This document shows, piece by piece, positions 7,098 to 7,134 of a DNA stretch of 64,000 bases. A program made the translations under genes and the position numbers. Source of the stretch: Stylophora pistillata (lineage: Eukaryota); the NCBI RefSeq assembly GCF_002571385.2, contig NW_019218020.1, positions 223,796 to 287,795 of the forward strand, in the 5' to 3' direction. The notes under the pieces are model-generated. The model was not told the DNA's origin. It did no database searches and saw nothing but the letters and a program-made list of their open reading frames with translations. Within the stretch, counting starts at the first letter, position 1. Each line of letters begins with the position of its first letter.

Positions 7098-7134
7098 GCT
7101 CGACGTTTCGACCGTCTCGGTCTTCCTCAGGAGC
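7098..7134 (-). ncRNA. Minimal type I hammerhead ribozyme motif (Penelope-like element type)
   Basis: Reverse complement reads GCUC-CUGAGGA-A-GACCG(AGA)CGGUC-GAAAC-GUC-GAGC. This gives stem I GCUC/GAGC, a complete CUGANGA...GAAA core, a 5-bp stem II, a loopless palindromic ACGU stem III and a GUC cleavage triplet. Confidence 0.8.

What the first reader, a model, noticed from the sequence alone, without database searches (positions are those of the whole stretch)
7098..7134. Core-intact 37-nt minimal hammerhead ribozyme in intergenic DNA
Seen: the minus strand reads GCUC CUGAGGA A GACCG-AGA-CGGUC GAAAC GUC^GAGC. All catalytic core positions are present and stems I and II pair perfectly. Stem III is only the self-complementary ACGU with no loop. 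Known: this minimal type I form is characteristic of Penelope-like retroelement pseudo-LTRs, where the palindromic stem III is proposed to form by dimerisation of two motifs. Inference: it may still self-cleave (between 7102 and 7101). It is on the same strand as the LRR-GPCR and about 1.6 kb past its stop, so a long 3' UTR or read-through transcript could be cut by it.
Basis: partly seen in the sequence, partly recalled or inferred. Interest (0 to 1): 0.8.

Follow-up and report, generated by a model that had tools for sequence, protein, structure and literature searches.

The report
Penelope retrotransposon fragment with minimal hammerhead
The 37-base hammerhead ribozyme motif is real, but it is an ordinary piece of the tail end of a Penelope-like retrotransposon, a kind already reported in thousands of copies in stony corals, and a lone copy like this one is not expected to cut RNA.

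Summary
Window 7134..7098 (minus strand) carries every hammerhead core position, a 4-bp helix I, a 5-bp helix II, one unpaired A between A9 and G10.1, and a loop-less ACGU in place of helix III.

It is not a chance motif and not a free-standing gene. The 29-nt core occurs at least 55 times in this 398-Mb coral genome. It always lies in the 3' non-coding end of one repeat family. [quoted passage not shown]

The window copy is a 184-bp, 5'-truncated 3' fragment. It lies head-to-head with a fragment of a second hammerhead-bearing repeat, inside a split (TA)n microsatellite. This is the standard PLE insertion layout.

Published work shows that minimal hammerheads of this kind are inactive as single motifs and only weakly active as tandem dimers. 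This locus has no second copy on the same strand.

RNA data show no transcript joining the GPCR to the site in three of four runs. The local transcript probably runs on the opposite strand.

The scan's first readers noted similar PLE minimal hammerheads on other DNA of this genome. Verdict: known kind, ordinary relic, low interest.

The parts
7098..7134 (-). Minimal type I hammerhead motif. It has helix I of 4 bp, the core CUGAGGA, an unpaired A, helix II of 5 bp with loop AGA, then GAAAC-GU-C. The predicted cleavage site is between 7102 and 7101.
   Evidence: The core is identical to 22 other genome copies. Helices I and II form with probability about 0.6 and 0.75 in a 337-nt context fold.
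7043..7199 (-). Main piece of the PLE fragment. It equals positions 1-157 of my 244-nt reference stretch L005:1432-1675, which is the 3' non-coding region of the element downstream of the RT-EN ORF. Its 3' end abuts TA repeats.
   Evidence: It is 94-99% identical to at least 40 other copies. In other copies the homology continues 930-1500 nt upstream into the GIY-YIG/RT ORF.
7200..7226 (-). Permuted piece: reference positions about 215-243, which normally lie downstream, joined directly upstream of reference position 1. This junction is private to this insertion.
   Evidence: map the piece. One search shows that the canonical neighbours differ. The 27-nt junction sequence occurs once in the genome.
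7239..7335 (+). 5'-truncated 3' fragment of a second, non-coding repeat family ('F2'), head-to-head with the PLE fragment. It carries its own minimal hammerhead at 7246-7272 (+), in which the base that pairs with G10.1 is A instead of C.
   Evidence: One search gives 312 first-look candidates at 93-97% identity. One search shows a 5'-truncation series with a common 3' end. Intact copies read CUGAAGA-A-GGUC-UCU-GACC-GAAAC-GU-U. No ORF is present.
7027..7042 (.). TA-rich tract flanking the composite insertion on the left. It is half of the split (TA)n target.
   Evidence: Most other copies of the family also end at (TA)n.
7337..7359 (.). (TA)n tract flanking the composite insertion on the right. 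It is the other half of the split target.

Best explanation
The motif is the minimal hammerhead ribozyme (min-HHR) in the 3' non-coding end of an endonuclease-positive Penelope-like retrotransposon. The window holds a short, dead, 5'-truncated 3' fragment of that element: 184 bp, with one private internal rearrangement. It was inserted by target-primed reverse transcription into a (TA)n microsatellite. It now sits head-to-head with a fragment of a second hammerhead-bearing non-coding repeat, with both 3' ends facing outward onto TA repeats. In the element's life cycle the ribozyme is thought to process element transcripts. Two copies would pair through the palindromic ACGU and swap their helix I strands to form a double hammerhead. 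That role is inferred from the literature and was not shown here. As a single copy in this locus the motif is most likely catalytically silent and has no host function.
For: Shown here:
- The core is repeated at least 55 times, against 0 for the control.
- The window copy is 94-99% identical to dispersed copies.
- Family homology extends 930-1500 nt upstream, with a graded series of 5' truncations and frequent inverted partner copies.
- The ORF that ends about 180 nt before the ribozyme has a C2H2 finger and a GIY-YIG domain with two cysteines inside the core.
- An overlapping copy supplies RT motifs, including RYIDD and a weak RVT_1 match.
- 3' ends abut (TA)n in most copies and on both sides of the window insertion.
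- The motif shows all four non-imposed hallmarks listed for PLE min-HHRs: an extra nucleotide between 9 and 10.1, the G10.1-C11.1 pair, a palindromic 15.2-16.2, and family-wise variation of helix II (PMC4209133).

From the literature:
- Single min-HHRs are inactive and tandem constructs weakly active (PMC4209133).
- One stony coral genome (Acropora millepora) has over 6000 type I hammerheads, most of them minimal and tied to PLEs or Terminons (PMC7229834).
- 5' truncation, inverted partner copies and a microsatellite bias are standard for PLEs (PMC8557442).

Energetics: the domain-swapped double hammerhead scores -20.5 kcal/mol, against -23.2 for two separate monomers.
Against: - No full-length copy of this family was recovered, so a 5' pseudo-LTR carrying the same ribozyme was not shown.
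- The GIY-YIG Pfam score (22.1 bits) is just under the curated cut-off (22.6), and the RVT_1 match is also below its cut-off. The call rests on the motifs and their arrangement.
- Nearest-neighbour energies ignore tertiary contacts and protein helpers, so weak in vivo cleavage cannot be excluded.
- Transcripts of the family exist on both strands, so trans partners are available in principle.
Confidence: 0.9

Rival explanations
1. A working 3'-UTR ribozyme. The GPCR mRNA, or its read-through transcript, extends across the site and is cut at 7102/7101, either alone or by pairing in trans with RNA from other copies of the family.
For: The motif is on the same strand as the 7tm_1 ORF and its core is intact. 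Run X11 has contigs covering 7491-9600 without a large gap, so a 3' UTR of at least 1.2 kb is possible. Family RNAs are present.
Against: Depth is zero over 7324-8593 in X22, X23 and X3. No pile of read ends appears at 7101/7102. All reads over the motif carry G at 7148, and their loose ends at 7199/7200 carry the canonical element sequence, so they come from other copies. Single min-HHRs are inactive in vitro. The dimer is not favoured energetically. The insertion is young (94-99% identical to other copies), so there is no sign of host selection.
Confidence: 0.04
2. A hammerhead 'retrozyme': a small non-coding tandem repeat that makes circular RNA. The permuted junction at 7200|7199 would be the unit-to-unit boundary.
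For: At first the shared stretch looked like a 244-nt unit. The window shows the end of that stretch joined to its start. Earlier notes of this scan report 244-245-nt retrozyme arrays in this genome.
Against: The junction is unique in the genome. No tandem arrays of this sequence were found. In other copies the stretch continues upstream into an RT-EN ORF. The canonical type I arrays of this genome have a 254-nt period and no BLAST similarity to this sequence.
Confidence: 0.03
3. A chance match to the hammerhead consensus in AT-rich intergenic DNA.
For: Rfam gives no hit. The relaxed pattern turns up in 3 of 100 shuffles of the window.
Against: The exact core occurs in 22 further genome copies and in 55 copies at up to 2 mismatches, against 0 for the control. 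The motif always sits at the same place in a retroelement. The descriptor gives 3344 matches against 2 for the control genome-wide.
Confidence: 0.01

Closest known systems
Minimal hammerhead ribozymes (min-HHR) of Penelope-like elements (Cervera & De la Pena 2014, PMC4209133)
   Same: Type I topology with the full catalytic core. Short helix I (4 bp). An unpaired nucleotide between A9 and G10.1. The G10.1-C11.1 pair. No helix III hairpin, only the palindrome A15.1-C15.2-G16.2-U16.1. It lies in the non-coding repeat region next to an RT + GIY-YIG ORF. Many solo and opposite-strand paired copies occur genome-wide.
   Different: Helix II is 5 bp, against the 7-8 bp described for the Schistosoma families. 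The exact sequence family was not found in searchable text. A 5' pseudo-LTR copy was not demonstrated for this family.
Minimal HHR families of the stony coral Acropora millepora (Cervera & de la Pena 2020, PMC7229834, Suppl. Fig. S1)
   Same: Same host group and same class of motif. That paper counts over 6000 type I HHRs in 16 families. All but the canonical family are minimal and attributed to PLEs or Terminons. Here one descriptor alone finds 3344.
   Different: I could not check whether this precise family is one of the 16, because the figure is not held as text.
Metazoan non-LTR retrozymes (canonical type I HHR tandem repeats that give circRNAs)
   Same: Both are hammerhead-bearing non-coding sequences linked to PLE machinery in the same genome. 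Canonical arrays are present here.
   Different: Retrozymes have a helix III hairpin, loop-loop contacts, tandem units and fast self-cleavage. This motif has none of the first three, and its sequence is unrelated.
Host-domesticated 3'-UTR hammerheads (e.g. the discontinuous hammerheads in mammalian C-type lectin 3' UTRs; from my own knowledge)
   Different: Those are conserved across species and fold into complete three-helix ribozymes. This one is a recent transposon fragment that lacks helix III, and no transcript was shown to link it to the gene.

Membership tests
Hammerhead ribozyme, PLE-type minimal variant (min-HHR) | Conserved core: C3 U4 G5 A6 N7 G8 A9, G12 A13 A14, the A15.1-U16.1 pair and H17 | tested here: met
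   CUGAGGA ... GAAA ... GU-C. C17 is at 7102.
Hammerhead ribozyme, PLE-type minimal variant (min-HHR) | Base-paired helices I and II around the core, with G10.1-C11.1 | tested here: met
   GCUC/GAGC and GACCG/CGGUC. Pair probabilities are about 0.6 and 0.75 in context.
Hammerhead ribozyme, PLE-type minimal variant (min-HHR) | [quoted passage not shown] | tested here: met
   a single A at 7123. The feature is listed in PMC4209133.
Hammerhead ribozyme, PLE-type minimal variant (min-HHR) | No helix III hairpin, with palindromic 15.2-16.2 that allows a dimeric helix III | tested here: met
   ACGU with no loop. A domain-swapped dimer can be drawn without crossing pairs.
Hammerhead ribozyme, PLE-type minimal variant (min-HHR) | Helix II sequence differs between families of one genome while pairing is kept | tested here: met
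   The listing holds at least eight different helix II sequences that still pair, such as GACCG/CGGUC, GGUC/GACC, GGGC/GCUC, GGCC/GGCC and GACUG/CAGUC. I read these by eye and did not test them statistically. Within this family the variants are mostly CpG decay, not compensatory changes.
Hammerhead ribozyme, PLE-type minimal variant (min-HHR) | Self-cleavage at H17 | not testable with these tools
   The reads give no pile of ends at 7101/7102, but depth is low and the reads come from other copies.
Rfam Hammerhead_1 (RF00163) | Score at or above the gathering threshold of the covariance model | tested here: not met
   There was no hit at gathering or at E<=10. The same model finds 62 canonical copies elsewhere in the genome.
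Penelope-like element (EN+), 3' region / pseudo-LTR | [quoted passage not shown] | tested here: met
   L055:1195-2157 has GIY-YIG at E 1.9e-4 (22.1 bits, cut-off 22.6) and the C..C between the two halves of the core. L072:593-1945(-) has RYIDD and RVT_1 at E 5.6e-5, and overlaps the former ORF at 96-100% identity.
Penelope-like element (EN+), 3' region / pseudo-LTR | 5'-truncated copies, inverted partner copies, microsatellite targets | tested here: met
   The description is in PMC8557442.
Penelope-like element (EN+), 3' region / pseudo-LTR | The same repeat, with the ribozyme, also upstream of the ORF (direct pseudo-LTR) | tested here: inconclusive
   No full-length copy was recovered. The longest copies are cut by 5' truncation, rearrangement or assembly gaps.
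Non-LTR retrozyme | Tandem units of about 170-400 bp, each with a canonical type I hammerhead | tested here: not met
   The junction is unique, no arrays were found, and there is no similarity to the 254-nt canonical arrays.

The most novel reading that the evidence does not exclude
The lone minimal hammerhead is active in vivo. It would pair in trans with abundant RNA from other copies of the same Penelope family, swapping helix I and forming the ACGU helix III. It would then trim a long 3' UTR or read-through transcript of the neighbouring LRR-GPCR. That would be an example of a transposon-family RNA acting as a trans cofactor for host mRNA processing.
Probability: 0.03. Interest if true: 0.65.

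Novelty: already known. Interest (0 to 1): 0.12.

Why it matters
The finding matters little on its own. It is a correct call of a motif class that was reported in cnidarians in 2014 and counted in the thousands in a stony coral in 2020. Its use is practical:

- Rfam models miss these minimal hammerheads completely, so a descriptor or a purpose-built model is needed to annotate them.
- In this genome, a hammerhead core next to (TA)n should be read first as a Penelope insertion end, not as a host regulatory ribozyme.
- How PLE minimal hammerheads work in vivo remains an open question, and this locus does not make it more testable.

Tried and rejected
- Rfam at gathering and at E<=10 gave no hammerhead hit. 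This is uninformative for this variant.
- I first read the shared 244-nt stretch as a retrozyme unit with a sharp start at 7199. I rejected this when the flanks of other copies turned out to be shared as well and the junction proved unique.
- Comparison with the canonical 254-nt hammerhead arrays found no similarity.
- The search for a full-length element recovered only truncated or rearranged copies, or copies interrupted by assembly gaps. I left the N runs as they are. L072's ORF contains a long X run.
- I looked for within-family compensatory changes. The variants are single hits, mostly at CpG, so there is no covariation signal inside the family.
- The loose end at 5829 looked like a splice junction. 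It is a diverged allele or paralogue of the adjacent sequence.
- A literature search for the exact helix II string found no relevant paper, and it is not in the held supplement text.
- To map the second repeat family in one script, I joined two natural non-coding pieces (L038:1001-1602 and L035:1603-1712) as a BLAST query only.

Full report
**Observation.** The minus strand of window 7134..7098 reads GCUC-CUGAGGA-A-GACCG-AGA-CGGUC-GAAAC-GUC-GAGC. All hammerhead core positions are present: C3-A9, G12-A14, A15.1, U16.1 and C17. Helix I (GCUC/GAGC) and helix II (GACCG/CGGUC, loop AGA) pair perfectly. One A is unpaired between A9 and G10.1. Helix III is reduced to the adjacent palindrome ACGU with no loop. 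The full 37-mer is unique in the window. A relaxed core pattern is expected 0.03 times in the window and is found once. Rfam finds nothing at its gathering scores, and no hammerhead at E<=10 over the local 651 bases. This says little, because the Rfam models include a helix III hairpin.

**The motif is part of a repeat.** The 29-nt core has 22 exact copies in the window's own 398-Mb genome, and 55 copies at up to 2 mismatches. The reversed control has 0. Around the motif, window 7199-7043 is 94-99% identical to dozens of dispersed copies.

I first took the shared stretch for a 244-nt unit (reference copy L005:1432-1675), because every match to the window began sharply at 7199. That sharp edge is a property of the window copy only. 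In the other copies the sequence upstream of that point is also shared. The homology runs on for 930-1500 nt with a graded series of 5' ends, and often with an inverted partial copy abutting the 5' end. The family has two alternative 3' ends, at reference positions about 165 and about 262. Most of them abut (TA)n.

**What the repeat is.** In copy L055, an ORF of 320 codons ends about 180 nt upstream of the ribozyme. [quoted passage not shown] Its sequence shows two cysteines between the GIY-like and YIG-like halves. Craig et al. give that arrangement as the hallmark of canonical EN+ Penelope-like elements (PMC8557442).

A second copy, L072, overlaps the N-terminal part of this ORF at 96-100% identity. 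It extends the ORF upstream into reverse-transcriptase motifs, including RYIDD, with a weak RVT_1 match. That ORF also crosses an assembly gap, which I left as it is. [quoted passage not shown] No full-length copy was recovered. A matching 5' pseudo-LTR is therefore not shown for this family.

**Anatomy of the locus.** Positions below are given on the plus strand.

| Window position | Strand | What it is |
|---|---|---|
| 7027-7042 | . | TA-rich tract |
| 7043-7199 | - | PLE 3' region, reference positions 1-157, with the ribozyme at 7098-7134 |
| 7200-7226 | - | Reference positions about 215-243, joined out of order |
| 7227-7238 | . | 12 nt of filler |
| 7239-7335 | + | 97-nt 3' fragment of a second repeat family, F2 |
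| 7337-7359 | . | (TA)n |

- The out-of-order junction at 7200|7199 occurs nowhere else in the genome. I read it as a private template switch or rearrangement during insertion. This is an inference.
- F2 has at least 312 first-look candidates in the genome.
- F2 shows a 5'-truncation series with a common 3' end and has no ORF.
- F2 carries its own minimal hammerhead. Intact copies read CUGAAGA-A-GGUC-UCU-GACC-GAAAC-GU-U. In the window copy (7246-7272, plus strand) the partner of G10.1 is A, so that helix is damaged.

The two fragments lie head-to-head. Their 3' ends point outward onto the two halves of a split (TA)n tract. This matches the insertion layout described for PLEs: 5' truncation, inverted partner copies and microsatellite bias (PMC8557442). 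The sequence cannot show whether the two fragments arrived in one event or in two hits on the same microsatellite.

**Comparison with the known class.** Cervera and De la Pena (PMC4209133) defined the PLE min-HHR. They listed features that emerged without being imposed by their search:

- families with covarying helices;
- the G10.1-C11.1 pair;
- a palindromic 15.2-16.2.

The window motif has all of these. A descriptor built on these features finds 3344 matches in this genome, against 2 for the reversed control. The matches fall into many families whose helix II sequences differ but still pair. Within the present family the variants are single changes, mostly at CpG. That looks like neutral decay of dead copies.

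For the stony coral Acropora millepora, the 2020 study reports over 6000 type I hammerheads in 16 families. Only family 1 is canonical and retrozyme-borne. The others are minimal and attributed to PLEs or Terminons (PMC7229834). This genome also has canonical type I hammerheads in arrays with a 254-nt period. They share no sequence similarity with the present element. The retrozyme reading is therefore rejected.

**Activity.** The published tests found no cleavage for a single min-HHR, and only low cleavage for dimeric and trimeric constructs, mostly at non-physiological Mg2+ (PMC4209133). In the window, no second hammerhead of this family lies on the same strand. The active double hammerhead requires two molecules of the same family, which swap helix I strands and form a 4-bp ACGU helix III. 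With nearest-neighbour energies that structure scores -20.5 kcal/mol, against -23.2 for two separately folded monomers. In its 337-nt context the monomer forms helices I and II with probability of about 0.6 and 0.75. I therefore expect this copy to be silent. This is an inference, not a measurement.

**Transcription.** I laid four RNA runs on window 5800-9600.

- Stranded raw reads (X22, X23) and polyA contigs (X3) cover 5800 to about 7078. The first mates lie almost only on the minus strand. In the usual library type this means a plus-strand RNA, which agrees with the plus-strand ORF at 5451-6074. That RNA would carry the complement of the ribozyme, if it reaches the motif at all.
- Depth over 7070-7323 is equal on both strands, and these reads come from other copies. 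Every read has G at 7148, where the window has A. The loose ends at 7199 and 7200 carry the canonical element sequence.
- No accumulation of read ends is reported at 7101/7102, but depth is low.
- Between 7324 and 8593, the three runs X22, X23 and X3 have zero depth.
- The random-primed run X11 has contigs over 7491-9600. A GPCR 3' UTR of at least 1.2 kb is therefore possible. Continuity across the (TA)n tract into the element cannot be judged from contigs.

The GPCR is real: 7tm_1 at E 2.4e-21. The read-through idea is thus unproven and, given the ribozyme's requirements, unlikely to matter.

**Verdict.** The functional inference is not supported. The object is an ordinary relic of a known, very abundant class. 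First readers of this scan noted comparable PLE minimal hammerheads on other DNA of the same genome. One of them lies about 200 bp downstream of a GIY-YIG ORF. These notes are unchecked, and I used them only as leads.

Noticed in passing
window 9051-9053 (minus-strand codon): The in-frame TGA inside the LRR-GPCR is noted separately as s1-785246. It reads AGA in the RNA contigs of two runs: plus-strand 9053 A>T in X3 (depth 9) and X11 (depth 18). Those contigs also differ from the window at about 2-3% of other positions. The stop may therefore be an allele- or assembly-specific variant and not a recoding site.
   Followed up: partly
window 7239-7335 (+); L032-L042: Second repeat family 'F2': a non-coding element of about 570-680 nt. 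It has a consistent 5' boundary in three loci, a 5'-truncation series, its own minimal hammerhead near the 3' end and at least 312 first-look candidates. It looks like a non-autonomous passenger of PLE machinery.
   Followed up: partly
genome-wide: The descriptor CTGANGA-N-G-N6-20-C-GAAAC-GT-H has 3344 matches, against 2 for the reversed control. The matches fall into several abundant sequence families.
   Followed up: partly
G000:C28:1248043-1249111 (L049), also C137 and C199: Canonical type I hammerheads (RF00163, 38-40 bits) lie in tandem arrays with a 254-nt period. These are the retrozyme class, unrelated in sequence to the element studied here.
   Followed up: partly
window 5451-7078 (+): An expressed plus-strand transcript: polyA contigs and stranded reads cover 5800 to about 7078. 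It holds a 207-codon ORF with only a faint Exo_endo_phos_2 match (E 0.007). Many fragment ends fall at 6971, which may be its polyA site. It ends just before, or just inside, the PLE insertion.
   Followed up: partly
window 39262-39502: This is the fold-back element noted as s1-785162. It is a head-to-head pair of the abundant 'GGGC...GCUC' minimal-hammerhead family. Both arms are cut within the CUGANGA box at the central junction, so neither arm has a complete core.
   Followed up: no
L002-L030: The PLE family has two alternative 3' ends about 97 nt apart (reference positions about 165 and about 262), both usually followed by (TA)n. The cause is not resolved. It could be two subfamilies, internal priming on the TA-rich stretch, or a long 'tail'.
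   Followed up: no
window 7091-7096 (-): An AAUAAA hexamer lies 5 nt downstream of the predicted cleavage site on the ribozyme strand. It is conserved in the reference copy. Its function is unknown.
   Followed up: no
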